Notes: a model not told the origin generated them from the sequence alone. A DNA stretch of 64,000 nt from Guillardia theta CCMP2712 (GCF_000315625.1 NW_005434608.1:145449-209448), one strand, 5' to 3'. Shown: positions 10,990 through 48,955, counted from the stretch's first letter. Program-made: numbers and translations.

Positions 10990-12467
10990 TTATGCCAGTA
11001 AAGCTGCTGCGTTTGCACAGCTGCACTCGCTAGCCTCCCATATCATTCGGATCAGATCGAGTTCCAACTCCAGAGCACTGAGACAGCTCCTCGTAGATCG
11101 TCCGAAGATCCCCAGCAGGAAACACGTTCTCCTCTCCTCCAGCACCTGCAAAACGCTCTCATCCACGCATTTCCCTTCTTTCCCCTCCTCCCTCCCTCCC
11201 TTCCCCCCTCTTCCTCAGCAACCCCCCCCCAACTTCCCCCCCCCCCCCCTTTCACCTCCAGCTCGACTCGGAGGTCCGCCCACGAGATACCCTCGAGCCG
11301 CGGCGGGGCACAGGGCATCTTCGACCAGTCCACCAAACTCGGGCTGACGTCGAGTCGCAGCTGCTCCAGGTGCCGCAGGTGCCGCAGGTTTCTTGCGATG
11401 CGCGTCACGCCCTCCTGCCCGATACCGTTGTTGTAAAGATCCACGTGCCTGAGCCTGGGGAGGCAGACGAAACACTCGGCCACGTGCCCAGCGCCCTCGT
11501 CGCCAATCTCGTTGAAACCCAAGTAGAGGGCCTCGAGGTTCGGGGTGGACTTCATGCTCCGGGCTAGGAAGAAGCAGCCTTCGCTCCCTATGTTGTTGTT
11601 GCAGATCCTCAGGTGCTCAAGGCGCGTGTTGAGGGCAAGGGCCCGGCCCAGGCTCGTCGCCCCCTCGTTCCCCACATGGTTGCACCCCATCTCCAACGAC
11701 ACTAGGGTAGGCTTGCACGCAAGATACTCCCCCAGCCGCTGAGCCCCGTCCTTGCGGATATTGTTGCCTCCTAGCTCGAGCGTCTTCAGCCCTCTGACGT
11801 GATGGAGAGCGTCGGTCAGCAGAGTCAGCCCGGCGTCACAGACCTGGTTGTTGAAGACGGAGAGGAACTCAAGGTTAACGAGATGGCGCAGGATGTCACT
11901 CAAGTGCCTGCAGCCCTCAGCCCCGATCTTGTTCCCTCTGACGTCGAGATGCACCAGCGACGGCATGTAAGGAAAGACTTCTCGAATGTACATGATCCCT
12001 TCCTCCATGTAGTTGGCACATCCCAGGTCCAGTCTCTGGACAAGCTTCAGGCTGTCGGCGTACTGACTGATGTCAAGAGAGACCCCCTGCTGCTCTTGCC
12101 TAGCCTCCTCTTGCAGCCCTGGAATGCTGGCAAGAACAGCTCGTTGATAGTGCAGCTTCTTAAGCACGTCGGAGATGGGCTCTCTGAATTTGGGGGCGCA
12201 GGTGCACCTTGAACACCAGAAGTCTTCGTCTTCCAAGAGCGACAGGTCATCATCCGAGCTCATGTCCATCTTTCTAGCTCCCTCTTCATCACTGCAAGAT
12301 AGTTCTGCCATGGCGATGTCGTCCTCGCATGCGCAGTCTCCGCACGACTCCTCAGCATGGGGCGTAGAAGCAGAAGAGGCAGGTGGCACCCTTGCACTGG
12401 CATGGCAAGCACTGCCATGACGCATGCTCGGGTCGGGTTGGCTTGTCTCAGGGAGGTTTCTCATCAT
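10990..12467 (-). CDS. Ribonuclease-inhibitor-type (28-aa) leucine-rich repeat protein
   Basis: About 8 repeats of LxxLxLxxNxIGxEGAxxLAxxL in ORF 11052-12806. A 3' intron (about 11146-11255) gives the C-terminus VLEERRTCFLLGIFGRSTRSCLSALELELDLIRMIW...LLA*. Start codon uncertain. Confidence 0.85.
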
Positions 12468-12975
12468 GATCTCATCGTCACCTCCTCCTCCTCCCTCCTC
12501 CTCCCTCCTCTCTCCTCTGCTGCTTCGCTCTCCTTCGCACCCATCGGGCATGTGCCCGCGGCCCTCGCCCTGGTGCCACCGACTGATGCGAGTCACCCTG
12601 TCCCAGGGCGGCTTGACTCCGGCGGCCCGCCGCCGGCCGGCGATCCGATCGGGCCGCCGGGCTCCGGGACAGAGGCCTGAGTCTCGGCGATCGGACTCTC
12701 TCCGACTCAGACCGTCGGACGGCCCGGACGGTCCGTCGTGCTCAGTAGACTTCGCCGGGCCGCCCGGCCGTCCTTCACTTGATGGAATCCCAACACTGCC
12801 ACACACATTGGTCTAGAGGACCATCTGATTTTGTTTCAAGTTACCTTGAAAACTGCCACCGTACAGTTGTATTACTATGACTCTGAGTAACTGAGTCAAA
12901 CTTGTAAGGTCACAAGTTCTCCCGGCACAAAACCAATTCCTTGCACCTGATGCTCTCGGCTTTCGAATGCCTCTC

Positions 12976-16853: not shown

Positions 16854-17566
16854 GTGCGGGAGGCTGTCTCAAGAGGAGGAGAAGGAGTCGGACGGGTCAC
16901 GCTGAAAAGAACGAATGCCTTTGGTTATAGGGGCTTGAAGCCGTGAGATGATGTCGTTGAAGTTCGTGAGGGGGGACGGACTAATTGAGCATACAAACTC
17001 AATTTTATTAGTATCAGGGAGAGGTGCGCCGTGAGAGGTGCGCCGTGACCGGGCTTATGAGATTATAACTCCTTTTTGCCAACCTCCGCAGGGACGCTCA
17101 TGGCACACCGAGGCAAGAGTGCGACATGCACAATCCGAATACGAGTGATTTCATTTATATCCGAGGCTGGTCCGATGGCGTCCGTGGACGTGATATAAAA
17201 CAGTTTGATGTCGGAGTTGCATCGAAGCTTCCTGAAGCATCTGGACGGATCTGGAGATTGATCTTAACCTTTGCGAAAAGCAGTGGTTTCAATTCATATC
17301 TTTGCTTTACTTTACGCACTGCCCCCCTTGATACCAGACCCTTTTTAAAGAGCCGCAGACTTTGTACTTCTCCTCCTCCTCCTCATATTCATATTCCTCC
17401 TCCTCCTCCTCCCCCTCATATATTCCTCCTTTTCCTCTTCACCATACATCTCCTTCTCGTCCTCCTCGCTTTAGTCCCCTTCTTTGTTACCATCCTCCAA
17501 TTCCGTCTCTAGCTTTTTGTGACCTCTCCTGCCTCTTGTTCTTGCTCCAACACACGCTGTGGTCTG

Positions 17567-18381
17567 ATGAGACGAACCGTCACCATCATGCCCCGTCCTC
17601 GCATCGGCACAGATGCCCTGACGATTCGCCAAGAGGTCGAGATCACCGTCGAAGTTCTTTCACCGCTTTTCGCGTCTCGACAAGAGAACGCTGCTCAAAC
17701 TCTGGTAAGCATGCTTTGCCATGTCAGCGCCCCTCCTTTCGTCTCATCCTAACTACCTGCTCTCTTTCCCAGGGCATATCGCTTTCAACCCTCAAGGCAG
17801 TCTGCAGGCAGCTCGGAATTTCACGTTGGCCGTATACGCGCAGAAGGAGGCGGGAGGCATCCTCCGAGAGTCGCGAAGGCTCCAACTCGTCCAGTCCGCT
17901 CAACGGAGATCACGGCATGTCAATAGAGCAGACGACTGGACAGACACAAGGGCAGCAGCAACAGGCGTTCATGGTAGCGGCAGAGGAGCAACAGGAGCAT
18001 TGCCAGGAAGAAGCGTGCTCGGTTGTTGTTGAACACACCACCGAAGCTATGTCTCATGGAATTGGCGGCGATTCCTCCCCTCCCCAACCTCCTGCCTCGT
18101 TTCCGTACGACCCTGTCACCGACTTCAGACCGAATATGCACGTGGGGGGGAGCAGCATGGCATGGCAGGGGGATGAGAGCACTTGGGACGAGCTTCTTGC
18201 TGGGGAGCAGGAGGCATCGGGCCGGTCTAATTCTCAAACTGAGTTAGGATGTAAGGCCTCCCTGGGGACGAGAGGAACAGGTGCTGCTCTGAGCAGCGAA
18301 CTTGACCGGATCGACCCAGGCTGGCTGTCCTGGTACCTGCATGGCAACGAGGAGTCAGAGGAAACGTGGCAGGGAACATGA
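17567..18381 (+). CDS. RWP-RK domain transcription factor (paralogue 3), intron 17705-17772
   Basis: MRRTVTIMPRPR...ITVEVLSPLFASRQENAAQTL|GISLSTLKAVCRQLGISRWPYTRRR. Confidence 0.92.
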
Positions 18382-18387
18382 CTGAAC

Positions 18388-18445
18388 AGAGCAGAGCAGA
18401 GCAGAGCAGAGCAGAGCAGAGCAGAGCAGAGCGAGAGCAGAGCAG
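18388..18445 (+). repeat. (GCAGA)n pentanucleotide repeat
   Basis: Tandem array running into the gap. Confidence 0.9.
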
Positions 18446-19267
18446 NNNNNNNNNNNNNNNNNNNNNNNNNNNNNNNNNNNNNNNNNNNNNNNNNNNNNNN
18501 NNNNNNNNNNNNNNNNNNNNNNNNNNNNNNNNNNNNNNNNNNNNNNNNNNNNNNNNNNNNNNNNNNNNNNNNNNNNNNNNNNNNNNNNNNNNNNNNNNNN
18601 NNNNNNNNNNNNNNNNNNNNNNNNNNNNNNNNNNNNNNNNNNNNNNNNNNNNNNNNNNNNNNNNNNNNNNNNNNNNNNNNNNNNNNNNNNNNNNNNNNNN
18701 NNNNNNNNNNNNNNNNNNNNNNNNNNNNNNNNNNNNNNNNNNNNNNNNNNNNNNNNNNNNNNNNNNNNNNNNNNNNNNNNNNNNNNNNNNNNNNNNNNNN
18801 NNNNNNNNNNNNNNNNNNNNNNNNNNNNNNNNNNNNNNNNNNNNNNNNNNNNNNNNNNNNNNNNNNNNNNNNNNNNNNNNNNNNNNNNNNNNNNNNNNNN
18901 NNNNNNNNNNNNNNNNNNNNNNNNNNNNNNNNNNNNNNNNNNNNNNNNNNNNNNNNNNNNNNNNNNNNNNNNNNNNNNNNNNNNNNNNNNNNNNNNNNNN
19001 NNNNNNNNNNNNNNNNNNNNNNNNNNNNNNNNNNNNNNNNNNNNNNNNNNNNNNNNNNNNNNNNNNNNNNNNNNNNNNNNNNNNNNNNNNNNNNNNNNNN
19101 NNNNNNNNNNNNNNNNNNNNNNNNNNNNNNNNNNNNNNNNNNNNNNNNNNNNNNNNNNNNNNNNNNNNNNNNNNNNNNNNNNNNNNNNNNNNNNNNNNNN
19201 NNNNNNNNNNNNNNNNNNNNNNNNNNNNNNNNNNNNNNNNNNNNNNNNNNNNNNNNNNNNNNNNNNC
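18446..19267. other. Assembly gap (about 820 N)
   Basis: Run of N flanked by (GCAGA)n and (CAT)n. Confidence 0.99.
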
Positions 19268-19315
19268 CATCACCATCACCATCACCATCATCATCATCAT
19301 CATCATCTTCTTCTT

Positions 19316-24344: not shown

Positions 24345-26018
<1,674 letters not shown>

Positions 26019-29488: not shown

Positions 29489-32400
29489 TCATGACGTTTT
29501 GGACTCGGCGAGCGGGCGGATTCCTGCGGGGTCCTCGTCAGTGTCCTTCCTAAAAGTGTCCGACTGAGAAGAGAACGCACGGGAGCTATCCGCTGCGAGC
29601 CAGACGTCGTAGCGGATGGACCATCCTTTGAAGTGCACGAGCACCCGCTGAAAGGCGACTGTCAGCTCCGAGGAGATGAGATGGGGTGTGGAGGGGGAAT
29701 AGCGCGCAGGATAGCAGATGAAGGCAAGGGGGGAGGAGAAGGAAGAGAGGGAGCGGGAAGGAGGAGTGAATAGGAGGAGGAGCAAGAGGGAGGAGGACCT
29801 GCGTCCTGAGGCTGTTATCTATGCTCTTGATTTCTGCCTGGTAGAAGGCTCCACGATCTTCACATTCGACGTTCTGCCCAACGAAGAAGCGACTCTTGGA
29901 AGTCTGCGCAATGGATCACAAGGGGGATGAACAAAGTGGAGGAGAGGATGGAGGGAAGGGAAGGGAAGAACGAAGGCTAGAAGAAACTGAGAATGAAAGG
30001 AAGGAGAGAAAGGAAGGATGAAGCACTGAGCTCCAGGAGGAATTCCTGACCTTGTGCTCGAACCGGCTGAGGTAGATCTCATCCCTGGTATCCTTGTCGG
30101 TGATCCCAGGGATCGAGCTCCTCCTCGACCCGCTGTCTCCTACGCTCTCCGCGTCCACCTCCCTCTTTCGCGCCTTCTTGCCTGAGCTCTGCGTTTCCTT
30201 GACAGCCTCCTCGGCCTCTCGCCCTGCCCCTTCTCCTTTGCTTCTGATCTTGGTGTTCTTGATGTGTGTGAACTTGTATCCCCTCCTCTTCTTCTTCCCG
30301 CGCGCTGAAGGAGGTTGTGCCTCGCGACTCTTGCTCTCCTCTCCTCCTGCCTTCCCATCGCTTCCCGCCGTTTTTGCAAGCTTGTAAGGACGCACGTGAT
30401 CGCTCGATCCGCTCGACCGCGCGATCGCTAGCTTCGCGTCCTCCTCTCGCTTCTTCGTCTCCTCCGCATCCCGGCGAATTGGCGGCCTTCCCCTCTTCCG
30501 CTTCAGCGGCTCCTTCCGCAGGATGATCGGATCCTTGTGCCTTCCCTTGCTCCTGATCGCCACCACCTACACACAGATCAACCTCACACTATGTATGCAG
30601 GAGGGATTTAAGTAGGAGGGGGGGGAGGGGGTGGGGGGCGTTACCTGCGGCATGGCCGAGCACAAGTGGCACATGTAGTTGTAGTCCGTGTCGTAGCAGA
30701 TGTCACGAGCCTCGATCGCCTCATCGAAGCACACGAGCGGGTCCTCCCGCATGCAGCAAGTGTGCTGCCAGCTACAGCACCACTCGCAGAAGCACCACTT
30801 GCAATCCCACAGCATCTCCTCAGGTGGGTGGTTCTCCCGGCCACACCGGCACACCACCGGGCACGCGAACTCCCAGTCGTACTTGTTGCACTTGCCGTCG
30901 GCGCATCTGCTGTTGCACTTGTGCGAGGCAGCCTGACCGGTCCAGTGTTAGGAGAGAGGAGGGGTGGAAGGCGGGTTGAGGCAGGATGTCAAGCAACAGC
31001 CAGAGAAAGGGGGAGAGAACGAGAGGCATGCAGGTTGAGGTAGAGGCGCGGAGGAGAGAGGAGGAGGGAGGGGAGCGAAGAGGAAGTGAGGGGAGGGGAG
31101 GGGAGGGGAGGAAAGAAGGAACTTACAGCATCGGCTGCGTCATTCAGATTTCTCCTCTGACGTGCTGTCAGCTCACGGACAGAGTCTTCCGTCTCCTCCG
31201 AAACGTGATGGCTCGCCCTCTTCATCGCCTTCCACAGCTTCGATTCTTCCCTCCACTCCTTGCTGCCTCCCCGCTGTATCTCGTCCTTGGGCGAGGCTCC
31301 GTTGGTCGACCTGAAAACCTGCCTAACACTTCCACTGCTGCCGCCAAGGCGGTGCAGCAACGCATCAGCCACGTCCAAGATTCTTCCTCGCACAGTCGCT
31401 GGCGCCGGATGCGCCTTCTTCAGGCTCTCCGACTTGATGAGGAGCTGCCGTACCAGTCTGTGGATCATCATCATCGTGGAGAACTTGCCGTGACGCATGT
31501 CGTTGAACTGCAGGTGGAGGTCGTTGAGCAGCGTGCATAGGTGCGCGCACTCGTTCAGGGTGAACTCGTGCTTATCCTCGTCCACGTTCACCAGGGGGTC
31601 TTCCTCGAGGGTCTCCTCCCGATGCTTGCTGCTCGACTTACTCTTCCCACTCCCGGCCTTGTCCTTGGAGTACTGTACCATGAAGATCGACCCCATCTCA
31701 CTGTTCCGCTGCATGTACTTGTTCATCGCCTCAACTGCCCGCTGGTGCCTTTCATGGCTCTGGATGGTCAGCTCTCGGCTTATCCTCCTCCCCTCCGAGC
31801 GCGAAGGCCCGCTATCAGCAGGGGGAGTCACTTCAGCTCTCGCCCTCTTGCTCGTTTCTGGTCTGCTCGGAGTGGCTGATGACGTCAGTTTCGCATCTCC
31901 TCCCGACAAGGCGGCTTCCAGCGCTCGAAGCATCAGCCCTCCTGGGAACTGCGGGACGTGCCGCAACGACATGTCAGGCCCGAAAAGCGACCGGGGAAGA
32001 CTCCTATCCTGCTCCCCATCCTCGTCCCGACGGGCGTTGCTGTCCCAGTCCGTGATGATCCCCTCCTGCTTAGCAACGTTCAGGAGCTTCGCATACCACG
32101 AGTCGAGCTGTGCAGGAGTGGGGCAATGTTGATGCAGCGGCCGCATGTGGAAGATGTAATCGTGATGCAGATCGTTGGGCGGCATGCTCCATATAAAAAG
32201 GGCTTCGAACCCTCGCTTCTTCACAGCATCCAGGTATCCAAGTAGAACTCTGCGGACAACCTCCTTCCTCTCTCGGGTGCACTCTTCAGGGTCTGAGCAG
32301 GTGCTACTGCTGCAGACATCCCTCCCCCGCAGGCAGCACGAGGCCTTGTGGTAAAGCTGGACGGAGTCGATGTAGGAGATGTAAGCCTTGTTCTTGTTCG

Positions 32401-33789
32401 GCTCGGGAGCGTCTGATCCAAACTCTGCCACCACCAGTCCCAGAAATGCTACATCGGTTTCGTCCTCACACTCAACGAAGCACATGATGTTCTTCAGCAG
32501 GTATGGGAAGTTCTGTTTGCCGAAACGTGCAGTGAAGCCTGGCGTGCTCTCCTGCATTCTCTTCACGTTGCTGACCGTCCTGATGATCACAGGGCAGCTC
32601 TTCTCCAAGCCCTTGAACACCTTCTTCGCCACATAGCTCTGCATGTGCTGCGACAGGGGGCTCTCTTTCATGTCCCTTGCCCTCAGGTTCAGGTACAGGC
32701 AGTTCAGCTGTGGTTTCGCTAGCGAGTTCCACTTGTCTTGACAGTCTCTGTGGATGCATCGAGGAGGAATGTCTCCATACATCTCCCGATTGTATCGAAC
32801 GCAACGGTCGTGGTACTTCCTGCCGCAGAAGGGGCATTCGCACATAGATTCCACATCTTGCTCCACCACTTTGGAAGTGAACTCCGTTGCAAGTATGACC
32901 TTCGATTTCGCCTCGTCCGGGGGGGCAGCAACCTTGGCTCCCTCTGTCTCTTCCTTGGGAGGAGTGTACATTCCATCACGTTGAACCACCTGGACGAGAA
33001 GGAGTCACATAAAACAGCAACCCTGCCTAGACGTCCTCAAGGGGCTTCTAACCTGGAAGCAATAGATGCACATGTTGACGATTGACACGGGGTGACCAGG
33101 CTCGTGCTCGGGTGGATCGCAATGTTGCCAGAAGGGCCACCCTTGCTTGATAATACCCTCACACCTGTTTGTCAAGAAGTGACTTTGGGTTCTGATTGAG
33201 AGGTCAAGTGGTCTACAACCTGCTACATATGAGTGCGATGGTCTTGGCGTTTCCAAGTTTCTTGGCAGGGTTGAAGCACATAGCACAAGGATCTTTCCAC
33301 TCATCCTCGTTGCTGTCTACCTTGGTATTCCGCGTTGAGATCCGTTCAGTGGAGGCGACAACCTTGGTTTCCGCTGCAGACTTACTCTGAGAGCACCGTC
33401 AGGCATAAACATGCAACAAGCGCCGGAAGAGCGTCTGCACCTCATCATCGCTGCTCCAAGTCGGAGATAACCTATCGGTCTGACGACGAATTCTCTTTCC
33501 ACTCCCAACAAGTACCTGAAAGAAGCTGTGAGTCGATATAAGGCATTCAGAGGGTGAAGATACCTCCTTCATGGGGTCACTGCCGGGCAAATATCGCTTT
33601 ACACTTCGCCGAGATCGTTTCCTTTCACGAGGAGGCTTCTTAGGAGAAAAGGATGGCCTCTTCTTGGCACGTTTCGGTCCAGAATTCTCGTATTCGCCTT
33701 CGCTCTCGTCATCCACTTCCCCACTACTTTCTTCCTCTTGGTCCTCATCACTTGAATCGTCATCCTCATCATCGTCGTCCTGATCATCA

Positions 33790-44369: not shown

Positions 44370-44829
44370 GGTCGTGTCATCAGATGTTTGCATGCTGAAC
44401 GATCGGATGAGTTTGCGGCGGGGTGAGGAGGAGGTGCCGTAGAGGGAGGGGAGATTCGACATGTACATCAAGGGGGAGGTACAAGCAAGGAGAGTGATTG
44501 AGCGATCTCAGCTACTGTAAGGATGGACCATTGTAGGCTTGCCTATCAAGGTTTTGATGAACTCAATCAAACGTTGCCATGACAACGATAGGGAATGGAT
44601 GATATATTTAAAAGAAGAAGAGTGAAGAGTGGTTGTCAATTTGTTGTGCTCTGCCCAAACACCGCAGATTTCTGAGTGGCCGCAACAACAACGCACAGAC
44701 TTTCTTTAATTTTGCATGCATAACGACAAGTGTGACTTGATAATCTACACAAAGAGGAGGGGGCCAACAAGTTACTGGGGTAACAGAAGAACGGAATACC
44801 ATCAGCGTAGCTCTCTGATCCATCGCATC

Positions 44830-47800
44830 TCAAGATTTGCCAGCCGAGAGCTCTCGCCGAGCCTGTGGGACCGAGTGAACGACAGGGAATGGCTGGAGGA
44901 GGGAGGAGGAAGAGGAGTAAGAGATGCACGATCAAGGGGGAGGAAGAGCAGGATAAAGCCATAGAGAAATGTGAGAGGGCAAGAAAGCTGAGGCAAAGGT
45001 GAGGGGAGGAGAGCGGTTGGAGGGAGGAAGGGGGAGGGAGTGAACGAGGAGAGGAAGGAATCGACGGATGGGAAAGGAAAGCGAGGGATGGGAAAGGGGG
45101 CGAGAGGGCGGAGGAGGAGAAGAAAGAGGAGGAGGCGAAATTTCTAAAGGCTGATTGAGTGGTTGGGACGTGCAACCCGGTTGCGCTTATCAAGAGTCCT
45201 CCTGTTGAGTTTGAGCGATTCAAGGGAGACTATGCAGTCCCTGAGCAGCTGTCAGTTTATCAAAAGCCCCCCTCCTCCTCGTCCTTCCCTCCCTCTCTGC
45301 TCCCTCCCTTCCTCCCTCCTCCACTTCCTCCGTCCTCCTCCTTGCCCTGCCCTGCCCTGCCCTGCCCTGCCCTGCCCTGCCCTGCCCTGCCCTGCCCTGC
45401 CCTGGCTCACTTCCCCTCTCCTCCTTGACTCCTTCACTGCATGTTGACCTGCAGTAGGTGAGGAGAAATCTCATCGTCTCCAACCGAGTTCGACGAGGGT
45501 TTTTCACGAGCATGAGCTGTGAGGCTCGTTAGGATTCGGTGAGAGGGGAAGAGGTGTGACAGGCAGAACAAACAAGAGGAGATGTCAAGACGGACTACAT
45601 GGGAGAAGAGAAGGAAAAGGGAGGAAGGCGAGAAGGCGGCAGACAGCCAGGGGAGGAAAGTAGAAAATGAAGGGAGGGAGGGAGGGAGGGAGGGAGGGAG
45701 GGAGGGAGGGAGGGAGCGAGCGAGGGAGCGAGGGAGGGAGCGAGGGAGGGAGCGAGCGAGGGAGCGAGGGAGGGAGCGAGGGAGGGAGAGGGAGGGAGGT
45801 ATGCCTGGATTGATCCGCTCTTTTGCACAGTAGCACTGAAGCATAGCTTGAGTTCTCCTTTCTCCACAAAGAAATTGAAATTGATCGCCCCCGTCAACTG
45901 CTCCAGGTTCTCACCTTTCGTCTCCTCCTCCTCCTCCTCCTCTCCTCCTTCACCTGCTTGCTGTATTTCTCCACCTTGTTCTCCTCCTTCAACCTCTCCA
46001 GCACCTTCGCCATCCGGTCAACGTCAAACCCGTAGCTGGGGTCCATGACCTGCCATCAGTCTTACTTCTCAACCCTAGCCCCTTTCCCATCCGCTCTGCC
46101 TCCCTTTCTCCTCCCCTTCCCCTTCCCCTCCCCTCGCTGCTTCAGATTTCCCAGGTCGAGCGAGCACCCTGACCGTCACCTACCGCGTTGTCGGTGGAGG
46201 AGAAGACGGGGTTTGGAGAGAGCTGGAGGTCTTCGATCTTTCGGCCCTGCTGCTCGAAGAGGCATCGGAAGAGGGGGAAGAGATCCTCGTTGCTCGACAG
46301 CTGCCCGGAGTACTGGGCCTTGTGCCTCTTCTCAGGGTCCTTGTTGTTGAAGCCGAAGAGGCGGATCGATGCCTTTTGCGACTTCTTGTTCTGCTCGAGC
46401 ATTTCCATGCCGATCGTGACGACGCCTCCAAAGAAGAGCCTCCCCTCCTCTGAGGGCCAGGATCAGCACCAAAAGCGGTGGAGCTGGAGGGGATAGTAGA
46501 GCAAAGTATGGGAGAAGCGATGAGGGAGAAGGAGGCGGGGGGGGGGTGGAGGAGAGGAGGGAGATGGAGAGAGGGGAGTGATGTCTGGAGAGGACACGGA
46601 AAGGAAGGAAGAGCAGCTGGGAGGTCTTACTGCTCTGTGCAGTTGTGATCTCATTGATCTTGAAGCTGCACCTCTTGTTGATATACAACATCAACCCCTT
46701 CTCCTGTTAGCTGTGTCAACGACGGTTGGAACGAGCCAATAGACAAAAAGGGACACACGATATGCTCGCTGAGCTCCTTGATAGTGACTGCCTGGCTGTT
46801 CTGAATTCTGAAGGATAACTGCAACAACATCGATCAGGAGAGCCAGCAGTTCATGTAGGACAGGAAGCGGAGCAAAAACATCCAAAGCAAGATCTGGAGT
46901 GGAACAAACCTTGACATTGGAAGTGGAGCTTGAGAGGGGGTTGAACAAGACATCGAAACCTTCCTTCCGGTACATGTCCCGAACGATCGCTTCGTCCGAG
47001 TCCAAACTCTAGAGCACGGCATCGTCAGGTGGATGCTCTTCGCAGAGTTTGACTCACGTCATCCTCCCAGTCGTTTTGAGGCGCAATGATGCCGTCAGCC
47101 TGCCCAACGTCGTTGAGCGTTCTGAAACAGACTTGGATACAGGATCCTTACTTTACGCTTCTTTGAACTAGGCGTTTCCTTTGTCATTTCATTTTGTTTT
47201 CTCTTGTTGTCTGCGGACTCACGTCAACTCTTGCCTGCTATCGGTGACGTTCAACTTACTTTGCGTTGCAGCGGGACAGGGAGAAGATTGCGCGGTAACG
47301 TTGCGTTGATCAACACTGCAAGTTATCTTAGCAGGTTGAAAATTACTGTGATGTGGGGGGGGGGGGGAGAGGGAGGGAGGGAGGGAGGGAGCGAAGGAGC
47401 AAGGTGTACTTCTGTTCTTCCAATGTGCCCTCCGCGTTCTCTTCTTCACTTCGACTTCTGTGAGACAAGTTTTCACACATCTCGACCAGGCCTGTCTTCT
47501 CGCTCACCCTTCCTCAGTCTTGCTCGATGACAGGTTGCTCTCCTGACTCGCAGATTTGAAGCTCGTGAGTACATCAGCAGCTTTCTCTGCAGCTTCTTCT
47601 GAAGTTGGGCACAGGAAAGAGTCAGTGCGAAATAGTCAAGGCCGATGAGGTATCAGGTTGAAATGAGGAGGAAAGACTGATAGCACTGGATAGAAAGATG
47701 CTACAAGACAAGAACCAAGAAGCTTACCTTCCTCAGGACGTTGAAATTGACTCTCTTGTTCATCTTCACGATCTGACGTCTCATGTTCCCTTCTGCCCTT

Positions 47801-48046
47801 GCTGTCGCGGAGATTGGGCCCATCCTGCCTTTCGGACAGTCCTCCGATCATCCGTTCTGCCGTAGCATGCACATCGGACAGAGAATAACTTTCTTGCGAA
47901 TAGTTTTCTTGCGAGCTGATCTGAAATGGTTCAATCTCAAAATGGTTCTGACTCGAAAAAGAATCCGATGGCATATCTGTTATCTTTCCATCGAATACAT
48001 CTGCAAAATCTTGCGAAGAACTCATCCTTCCTGACTCCTGCGACAT
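44830..48046 (-). CDS. Divergent TATA-binding-protein-fold protein with a long SQ-rich N-terminal extension, more than 12 exons
   Basis: The spliced C-terminal half shows two pseudo-repeats beginning NPLSSSTSNV and NPVFSSTDNA, each with TBP-like strand/helix order (see findings). The gene is well supported by frame-consistent splicing; the fold call is an inference. Confidence 0.55.
45345..45403 (+). repeat. (CCCTG)n pentanucleotide repeat in an intron
   Basis: Direct tandem array. Confidence 0.9.
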
Positions 48047-48955
48047 GTTGGGCTGAGCCCGTCGCTCGATTTCCTGACTAGCAGCTCGAGCGCCCGGTTG
48101 TCAGGTGCGAGACATGTCCTTTCTCTCAACCCATTCGCGGGATACCACCCACAGCTAGCCGTTCATGCACACGGGAGCGACGAAGCTGAGGGTTTCATCT
48201 GCAAAGATGTCAAGAGCGTTGAATGCAGGAAACCTTGACAGGTATTCCCAACTCCATCGATCATCAGGCGCGGTGAAAGTGACATGTTACTACCCTCCGT
48301 TTATTGACCTCCCTTGTCCTGTTGGAGGCTGGAACCTCATCCTGGTCACCTCACTCTAGCGTGTCTCCCTCTTGTCTGCTCCATATCGGCCCTCACCTCG
48401 CGGCATTAACTCTCTCTACCCCTCAATATTTGAGTCTCGATCCCATTGATACGTTCTCACTTTCCCTCTACGCATCTCGCAGCTCAACCAGTCTTCCTAT
48501 GTTTCTTTGTTACTATTCATCTTCGCTCGTTCTCTTCCTCTTTCTCGCCCACCCCATCGCCCCTTGATCCCACACGCGTCAACTCCTCCATTTCCCACCT
48601 GCATCCCTCAACTTATCGTTTTTTCCAGCATCGCATGCCACAGTGCACCTGAAGTCCCTTGTCTCTCATTTCATCTGCAGCTTGTCCTCTCTCTGCCTCC
48701 TCCTCCCCTCCCGCTCCCTTCCTCCTCCCCTCCCGCTCCCCTCCTCCTCCCCTCCCGCTCCGCACCATCCCTGCTCCTTCTCATCTCTTCCCTCTCCTTC
48801 ATCTACGTTCTAGACGCGACATTCAGCCGTACCCCACCCCCTTCGCTACCTGACAATGATCGTAATATGACCGGTACCATTTGCTCCTCTGAAGACCCTC
48901 AGGAGCTCTTAGGTTTGGTGGGGTACTGAGACCGTTACAAACGGTTATTTGGAAA

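What the first reader, a model, noticed from the sequence alone, without database searches (positions are those of the whole stretch)
45170..46965. Hidden, highly divergent TBP-fold protein resembling giant-virus-type TBP-like factors
Seen: splicing eight short minus-strand exons gives FNPLSSSTSNVK-LSFRIQNSQAVTIKELSEHI-EKGL...-KEGRLFFGGVVTIGM..KASIRLFGFNN..KAQYSGQLSSNEDLFPLFRCLF, then a second unit NPVFSSTDNA-VMDPSYGFDVDRMAKVL..KYSKQ-LTGAINFNFF..FSATVQKSGSIQ-LMLVKNPRRTRLETMRFLLTYCR. The duplicated NPxxSSTxN start and the strand-helix-strands-xSG-helix order mirror the two halves of TBP. Known: TBP kinks the TATA box with two Phe pairs (RFAAV/LIFSSG and LFPGL/LIFVSG). Inference: repeat 1 keeps Phe at both sites (LFFGG, RLFG) while repeat 2 loses them (LTGA, VQKSG), which suggests asymmetric, non-TATA recognition. 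The long insert after helix 1 and the F..VTI / I.LF / Q.SG pattern look to me more like nucleocytoviral TBP-like proteins than canonical TBP. This could be an intronised viral acquisition or a lineage-specific promoter factor. No single track ORF reveals it.
Basis: partly seen in the sequence, partly recalled or inferred. Interest (0 to 1): 0.82.

Follow-up and report, generated by a model that had tools for sequence, protein, structure and literature searches.

The report
Cryptophyte protein with predicted TBP-like fold
An expressed 15-exon nuclear gene of the alga Guillardia theta encodes an unnamed, lineage-restricted protein whose predicted structure resembles the two-lobed saddle of the TATA-binding protein, but no sequence test places it in that family and nothing links it to a virus.

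Summary
The exon chain is real. An assembled transcript (L017) matches the window at 100% identity in 15 exons, 48200..44690 on the minus strand.

The window is Guillardia theta CCMP2712. The public gene model (GUITHDRAFT_164630, hypothetical protein) is wrong at its 5' end and skips exon 12.

Relatives are few: Baffinella frigidus and about five environmental lineages. Two intron positions are shared with relatives. None was found in 2.9 million viral contigs.

Sequence methods see no TBP: Pfam on 18 members, profiles against PDB sequences, and a profile test of the two halves against each other.

Two AlphaFold2 models (mean pLDDT about 50; repeat 1 at 70-86, the sheet of repeat 2 below 50) both give strand-helix-four strands-helix twice. 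Foldseek puts TBP chains on top both times (probability 0.89-0.99, TM up to 0.53, E 0.002-0.02). Giant-virus TBP-like models also match.

Verdict:
- The TBP-like fold is plausible but not proven.
- TBP family membership is not shown.
- Viral origin is unsupported.
- The Phe argument was not testable.

The parts
44690..48200 (-). Whole transcribed gene (15 exons). The coding part runs from ATG at 48046 to the stop at 44832-44830. It corresponds to GUITHDRAFT_164630 of Guillardia theta CCMP2712.
   Evidence: Transcript contig L017 aligns at 100% identity in 15 blocks. Identified through P0002 and the scaffold position.
47058..48200 (-). Exons 1-6: 48200..47728, 47598..47508, 47457..47410, 47315..47260, 47210..47152, 47099..47058. 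They encode the 5' UTR and an acidic, Ser-rich N-terminal region predicted to be disordered (pI 4.45), with a Lys/Arg cluster near its end.
   Evidence: for the bounds. for pLDDT below 50 over residues 1-198. for the charge.
46910..47008 (-). It encodes a conserved helix ahead of the domain and the first copy of the short motif.
   Evidence: helix 199-213.
46759..46818 (-). Exon 8: strand S1 and the short helix H1 of repeat 1.
   Evidence: Junctions; structural elements.
46631..46703 (-). Exon 9: a small extra strand and strand S2 of repeat 1. It ends with one base of a split codon.
   Evidence: Phase shown; mapped.
46184..46449 (-). Exon 10, the longest. It encodes the S2-S3 turn with its conserved aromatic-glycine motif, S3, S4, the most conserved loop of the family, S5, helix H2, strand S1' and the second copy of the motif.
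   Evidence: Used as the query. Invariant columns. The intron after it is shared with relative L010.
45954..46049 (-). Exon 11: helix H1' of repeat 2.
   Evidence: helix 374-386.
45805..45897 (-). Exon 12: the strands of repeat 2 (low model confidence). It is followed by the only GC-AG intron (45804..45517) and is missing from the public NCBI model.
   Evidence: GC donor is the only workable junction; P0002 lacks it; pLDDT below 50.
45449..45516 (-). Exon 13: helix H2' of repeat 2, the best conserved stretch of the C-terminal half.
   Evidence: The intron after it has the same position and phase in relative L002.
45177..45240 (-). Exon 14: a C-terminal extension with a conserved basic helix.
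44690..44862 (-). Exon 15: the last ten codons, the stop and the 3' UTR.

Best explanation
This is an ordinary, expressed, intron-rich nuclear gene of the cryptophyte Guillardia theta.

Shown:
- It encodes a protein of about 488 residues.
- The acidic N-terminal half is predicted to be disordered and ends in a Lys/Arg cluster.
- The basic C-terminal domain of about 250 residues is conserved only in cryptophyte-like eukaryotes.

Predicted at moderate confidence: the domain folds as two tandem strand-helix-four strands-helix units, a ten-stranded sheet backed by four helices, as in the TATA-binding protein. A basic helix follows.

Inferred: the protein is nuclear and uses the basic sheet side and the invariant loop between S4 and S5 of repeat 1 to hold nucleic acid, most likely DNA. 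The acidic tail would recruit or regulate partners. That would make it a lineage-specific chromatin or promoter factor rather than the general TBP.
For: - Gene and splicing: transcript L017 at 100% identity in 15 exons, and the transcript-derived proteins P0001 and P0010.
- Family: 9 clusters among 1.84 billion representatives, Baffinella frigidus, further fragments, and 11 metagenome loci of about five kinds. Only residues ~182-473 are conserved.
- Fold: two AlphaFold2 runs with the same order of elements.
- Foldseek against the PDB, model 1: TBP chains take 13 of the top 15 ranks listed, after ywmB at rank 1 (probability up to 0.97).
- Foldseek against the PDB, model 2: all of the top 11 are TBP chains (TM by target 0.42-0.51, probability 0.89-0.99).
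- Foldseek against BFVD: 15 matches at E <= 0.001, and the named ones are mostly TBP or TBP-like.
- Published description of TBP as a ten-stranded sheet with four helices and quasi two-fold symmetry (PMC1885664).
- Charge: domain pI 9.5, tail pI 4.45.
- Host context and shared introns.
Against: - Mean pLDDT is about 50 and pTM 0.34-0.38. The sheet of repeat 2 is below 50, and only 11-18 mostly fragmentary sequences fed the models.
- No Foldseek match to the PDB reaches E 0.001. TM stays at or below 0.53 and rmsd is 6-10 A.
- Pfam finds no TBP in any of 18 members. Profiles against PDB sequences find nothing.
- The two halves show no profile similarity.
- Nuclear location and nucleic-acid binding rest only on charge, a Lys/Arg cluster and the fold analogy.
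Confidence: 0.5

Rival explanations
1. The fold prediction is an artefact of a shallow alignment. The protein is a lineage-specific orphan with some other alpha/beta fold, and the TBP matches are generic sheet-plus-helix resemblance.
For: Low confidence in repeat 2 and low pTM. PDB E-values are all above 0.001. Unrelated sheet proteins (lipocalins, PsbP, START-like) appear further down the same lists. There is no sequence support of any kind.
Against: Two runs with different alignments give the same order of elements. Both put TBP on top with probability 0.9-0.99 over about 230-255 columns, which covers the whole TBP core. An independent library of viral models returns proteins named TBP.
Confidence: 0.25
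2. It is a true but extremely diverged paralogue of TBP (a TRF/TLF-like factor). It descended from the cellular TBP gene and still works in pre-initiation complexes on a subset of promoters.
For: The best structural matches are cellular TBPs across both repeats. The domain is basic and carries an acidic N-terminal extension, as many TBPs carry variable N-termini (the comparison with TBP N-termini is my own knowledge).
Against: No Pfam PF00352 signal at E up to 10 in 18 members. No internal repeat signal. About 9-11% identity in the structural alignments. There are extra elements and a C-terminal extension.
Confidence: 0.13
3. The domain belongs with other users of the same half-fold, such as the CENP-L/CENP-N/RdgC homology domain of the inner kinetochore. 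It would then act as a chromatin or protein scaffold rather than a promoter factor.
For: Iml3 (CENP-L), CENP-N and RdgC appear in both PDB lists. The literature links CENP-L/N to RdgC (PMC9235857) and the RdgC centre domain to half of TBP (PMC1885664).
Against: These matches rank below TBP, with probability 0.2-0.8 and TM 0.25-0.31. No Pfam hit to CENP-L or CENP-N families.
Confidence: 0.08
4. The gene was acquired from a giant virus (a nucleocytoviral TBP-like gene) and later gained introns.
For: Foldseek E-values are lower against viral models (best 4e-06) than against the PDB. Several matches are named TBP of algal or amoebal giant viruses.
Against: - No relative in 2.9 million viral contigs.
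- TM-scores to viral models are only 0.10-0.33, lower than to cellular TBP.
- The gene has 14 introns, and two positions are shared with relatives of 34-50% identity.
- GC content matches the neighbourhood.
- The neighbours are host genes: a flavoprotein oxidoreductase and a DCN1-like protein.
- The top four viral matches carry no name.
Confidence: 0.04

Closest known systems
TATA-binding protein core domain (TBP; Pfam PF00352) and its paralogues TRF/TLF
   Same: The predicted order of elements is strand-helix-four strands-helix, twice, giving about ten strands and four helices. TBP chains are the best structural matches over the whole domain. The domain is basic and has a variable N-terminal extension.
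   Different: There is no sequence or profile similarity and no detectable similarity between the two halves. Identity in the structural alignments is about 9-11%. The protein has extra small strands, an extra N-terminal helix and a basic C-terminal helix. It is restricted to cryptophyte-like organisms.
TBP-like proteins of large DNA viruses (giant-virus TBPs, the asfarvirus B263R type, herpesvirus late-gene TBP mimics)
   Same: They are also too diverged for easy sequence detection and were recognised by fold (PMC5825884 and PMC4893493, listed). Predicted viral models of this kind match the model at E 4e-06 to 1e-03.
   Different: No sequence relative in viral contigs. TM-scores are low. The gene is an intron-rich host gene in host context with introns shared across species.
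CENP-L / CENP-N / RdgC homology domain
   Same: It uses a related sheet-plus-helix half-fold and binds DNA or chromatin. These proteins appear in the Foldseek lists.
   Different: The scores are lower. Those proteins pair two chains, whereas here two units lie in one chain as in TBP.

Membership tests
TBP (PF00352) | Significant match to the family profile, once per repeat | tested here: not met
   hmmscan against Pfam at E up to 10: no PF00352 match for the single exons, for seven proteins or for all 18 family members. HMMER filters may hide very weak matches.
TBP (PF00352) | Two tandem repeats that are recognisably similar to each other | tested here: not met
   hhalign of the N-half profile against the C-half profile gave P 0.27, with only 20 columns aligned out of register. 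The short shared motif is not conserved in relatives.
TBP (PF00352) | Saddle fold: ten-stranded antiparallel sheet with four helices on the convex side and quasi two-fold symmetry | tested here: inconclusive
   The order of elements fits in two models. TBP chains are the top Foldseek matches with probability 0.89-0.99 and TM up to 0.53, but E is 0.002-0.02 and pLDDT is below 50 in the sheet of repeat 2.
TBP (PF00352) | Two pairs of Phe at the DNA-kinking positions | not testable with these tools
Conserved Phe residues exist in both halves, but their equivalence is unknown.
TBP (PF00352) | Binds TATA-like DNA and the partners TFIIA/TFIIB | not testable with these tools
   Needs structural or occupancy data on the native protein.
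Giant-virus TBP-like proteins | Fold-level match to viral TBP-like proteins | tested here: inconclusive
   BFVD gave 15 matches at E <= 0.001, several named TBP, but TM was 0.10-0.33 and rmsd 9-28 A.
Giant-virus TBP-like proteins | Sequence relatives encoded in viral genomes, or viral genomic context | tested here: not met
   The IMG/VR scan found 240 pattern matches, none confirmed by tblastn. Neighbours are host genes and introns are shared with relatives.
CENP-L / CENP-N (kinetochore) | Profile match, or best structural match, to CENP-L/Iml3 or CENP-N | tested here: not met
   No Pfam match. Structural matches rank below TBP with probability 0.2-0.8.

The most novel reading that the evidence does not exclude
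Cryptophytes carry a second TBP-fold DNA-binding factor that sequence methods cannot detect. It would have two unlike halves and recognise a promoter or chromatin element other than the TATA box. That would be a new cellular branch of the TBP-fold superfamily, comparable in divergence to the viral TBP mimics.
Probability: 0.2. Interest if true: 0.75.

Novelty: new variant of a known kind. Interest (0 to 1): 0.5.

Why it matters
TBP-fold factors sit at the base of transcription initiation. Outside the TBP/TRF family, single-chain double-repeat versions have so far been recognised mainly in large DNA viruses, and there only by structure. A cellular, lineage-restricted family of the same kind would bear on two questions. 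One is how far this fold can drift while keeping its architecture. The other is whether secondary-plastid algae with two nuclei-derived genomes use extra promoter or chromatin factors.

At a practical level, the public gene model for this locus is wrong: it has a wrong 5' reading frame, a skipped exon behind a GC-AG intron, and a missed last exon. This hides half of repeat 2 from database users.

Tried and rejected
- Pfam on each exon separately found nothing.
- A PDB sequence search with exon 10 found nothing.
- A word-index protein search with exon 10 found nothing, because only proteins of 58-185 residues were candidates.
- A profile of the first alignment against PDB sequences gave a DNA gyrase B match at E 0.007. 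I reject it. It comes from P0008, a chimeric environmental protein whose tail is a gyrase B C-terminus, and it disappears once P0008is removed.
- A weak Pfam match to Alg17C_C in 8 members (best E 0.007, below the cut-off, 15 residues over the invariant loop) is treated as chance.
- PHROGs found nothing.
- The first related-loci run failed because alignment A5 was too gappy. It was repeated with A4.
- A literature search for the locus tag, and for Guillardia together with TBP, returned no paper.
- I could not run a direct profile-profile comparison with a TBP alignment.
The spliced product was taken from database proteins returned by the search (P0001, P0010) and from transcript contig L017.

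Full report
**What is in the sequence**

Their splice phases fit together. The spliced product reached me from the databases instead.

A full-library search with exon 10 alone (88 residues) returned nine clusters. Two of them are 100% identical to the exon:
- P0001 (481 aa), from a 1768-nt JGI contig. Its cluster also holds P0010 (488 aa), an MMETSP transcript product.
- P0002 (347 aa), which is the NCBI protein XP_005827538.1, hypothetical protein GUITHDRAFT_164630 of Guillardia theta CCMP2712.

So the window is cryptophyte nuclear DNA, scaffold JH993030.1.

**Transcript evidence**

The JGI contig (L017) aligns to the window at 100% identity in 15 colinear blocks from 48200 to 44690. Choosing the only workable junction in each case gives 13 GT-AG introns and one GC-AG intron, at 45804..45517. 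P0010 maps onto the same exons, from the ATG at 48046 to the stop at 44832-44830.

The NCBI model (P0002) reads the 5' exons in another frame. It skips exon 12, the one behind the GC donor, and misses the last exon. This removes the strands of repeat 2.

**Surroundings**

- The gene lies head-to-head with a pyridine-nucleotide disulphide oxidoreductase gene.
- It lies tail-to-tail with a DCN1-like gene that has UBA and cullin-binding domains.
- Elsewhere the window holds exons with LRR, p300-type acetyltransferase, M24 peptidase and RWP-RK domains.
- GC content at the gene (0.52-0.54) matches the window.
- Nothing in the neighbourhood looks viral.

**The family**

Relatives are few:
- a protein of the cryptophyte Baffinella frigidus (P0017);
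- several environmental proteins and fragments;
- 11 metagenome loci that fall into about five kinds.

Only residues ~182-473 of the G. theta protein are conserved. The acidic N-terminal half is not.

The invariant residues cluster in three places: the S4-loop-S5 hairpin of repeat 1, helix H2, and the end of S1'.

Two intron positions are shared with relatives of 34-50% identity:
- The phase-0 intron after exon 10 has an exact counterpart in L010. Several fragment proteins also end by reading into an intron at that point.
- The phase-2 intron after exon 13 has an exact counterpart in L002.

Other introns differ between lineages. This is the pattern of an old, vertically inherited eukaryotic gene.

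**Sequence tests of the TBP idea**

All were negative:
- Pfam at E up to 10 on single exons, on seven proteins and on all 18 aligned members gives no TBP match and no other credible family.
- Family profiles against all PDB chain sequences give nothing. The one exception is a gyrase B match caused by a chimeric member, P0008, which I discard.
- A profile comparison of the N-half with the C-half is not significant (P 0.27).

**Structure tests**

Two AlphaFold2 runs gave models with mean pLDDT 49.8 and 51.2. One used 11 sequences and the other 18.
- The first ~198 residues are predicted to be disordered.
- Repeat 1 reaches pLDDT 70-86.
- The helices of repeat 2 reach about 70.
- The sheet of repeat 2 stays below 50.

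Both models give the same order of elements:
- a helix (199-213);
- then S1, H1, a small strand, S2, S3, S4, S5, H2;
- then S1', two tiny strands, H1', four to six short strands, H2';
- then a basic C-terminal helix.

This matches the published description of TBP: a ten-stranded sheet with four helices and quasi two-fold symmetry (PMC1885664).

Foldseek against the PDB:
- Model 1: ywmB ranks first. TBP chains fill ranks 2-13 and 15 of the top 15 (E from 1.6e-03, probability up to 0.97, TM by target 0.30-0.39).
- Model 2: all of ranks 1-11 are TBP chains (E 5e-03 to 2e-02, probability 0.89-0.99, TM by target 0.42-0.51). TM reaches 0.53 further down the list.
- About 230-255 columns are aligned, which covers the full TBP core.
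- Iml3/CENP-L, CENP-N and RdgC follow at lower scores. They share half of this fold according to the literature.

Foldseek against predicted viral structures gave 15 matches at E <= 0.001, the best at 4e-06. Those that carry a name are mostly TBPs of giant viruses of algae and amoebae, plus TBP-like proteins of other large DNA viruses. TM is only 0.10-0.33. That list, which the tool printed, includes some viruses of animals. I fetched none of them.

**Viral origin**

A scan of 2.9 million viral contigs with the family's two most conserved patterns found no relative. Add the host context, the 14 introns, the shared intron positions and the unremarkable composition, and nothing supports a recent viral acquisition. 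An ancient one cannot be excluded but has no positive evidence beyond fold-level E-values.

**How it most likely works**

Shown: an expressed host gene, and a conserved basic domain (pI 9.5) behind an acidic tail (pI 4.45) predicted to be disordered, with a Lys/Arg cluster.

Predicted with moderate confidence: a TBP-like double-repeat saddle.

Inferred: nuclear location; nucleic-acid binding by the sheet face and the invariant basic loop; a lineage-specific role at promoters or chromatin.

I note only two things:
- In the models the conserved aromatic-glycine motif of repeat 1 lies in the S2-S3 turn.
- Repeat 2 keeps conserved Phe residues in its first strands.

**Comparison and novelty**

The domain works like, or at least looks like, TBP. 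It fails the sequence-defined membership tests for PF00352, so I do not file it as a TBP. It is best described as a new, cryptophyte-restricted variant within the TBP-like fold class, pending a better structure. I found no paper on it.

Early in my reasoning I began to recall TBP motif letters from memory. I also did not use the TBP letters quoted in the finding.

Noticed in passing
window 45147-47823 (NCBI model of GUITHDRAFT_164630, protein P0002): The public gene model is faulty. Its first ~80 residues come from another reading frame of exons 1-5, exon 12 is skipped, and the final intron and last exon are missed. The transcript-derived proteins P0001 and P0010 give the correct product.
   Followed up: yes
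window 45517-45804: A GC-AG intron, the only non-GT donor among 14 introns of this gene. The transcript junction allows no other canonical choice. In relative L002 the nearest intron lies about 7 nt upstream and has a GT donor.
   Followed up: partly
window 45343-45404 and 45671-45799: Perfect and near-perfect microsatellites inside introns: a 5-nt unit in 12 copies and a 4/12-nt unit in about 33 copies. CT-rich low-complexity tracts are common in the other introns.
   Followed up: no
window ~18400-19300: A stretch with zero base composition, that is, an assembly gap (run of N). It explains the GC dip at 18-20 kb. It lies next to an ORF with an RWP-RK domain at 17362-18381.
   Followed up: partly
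window 24354-25583 (+): An ORF combining a Peptidase_M24 domain with an HTH_21 domain, a helix-turn-helix-like domain by its Pfam description. The pairing looked unusual to me. A long antisense ORF overlaps it.
   Followed up: no
protein P0008 (environmental, 122 aa): A chimeric protein. Its first half belongs to this family and its tail is the C-terminus of DNA gyrase subunit B. It produced a spurious PDB match until it was removed.
   Followed up: yes
window 30989-32989 (-) and 11052-12806 (-): Large exons with a p300/CBP-type histone acetyltransferase domain and with leucine-rich repeats. These are ordinary host genes that help show the window is not a viral island.
   Followed up: no
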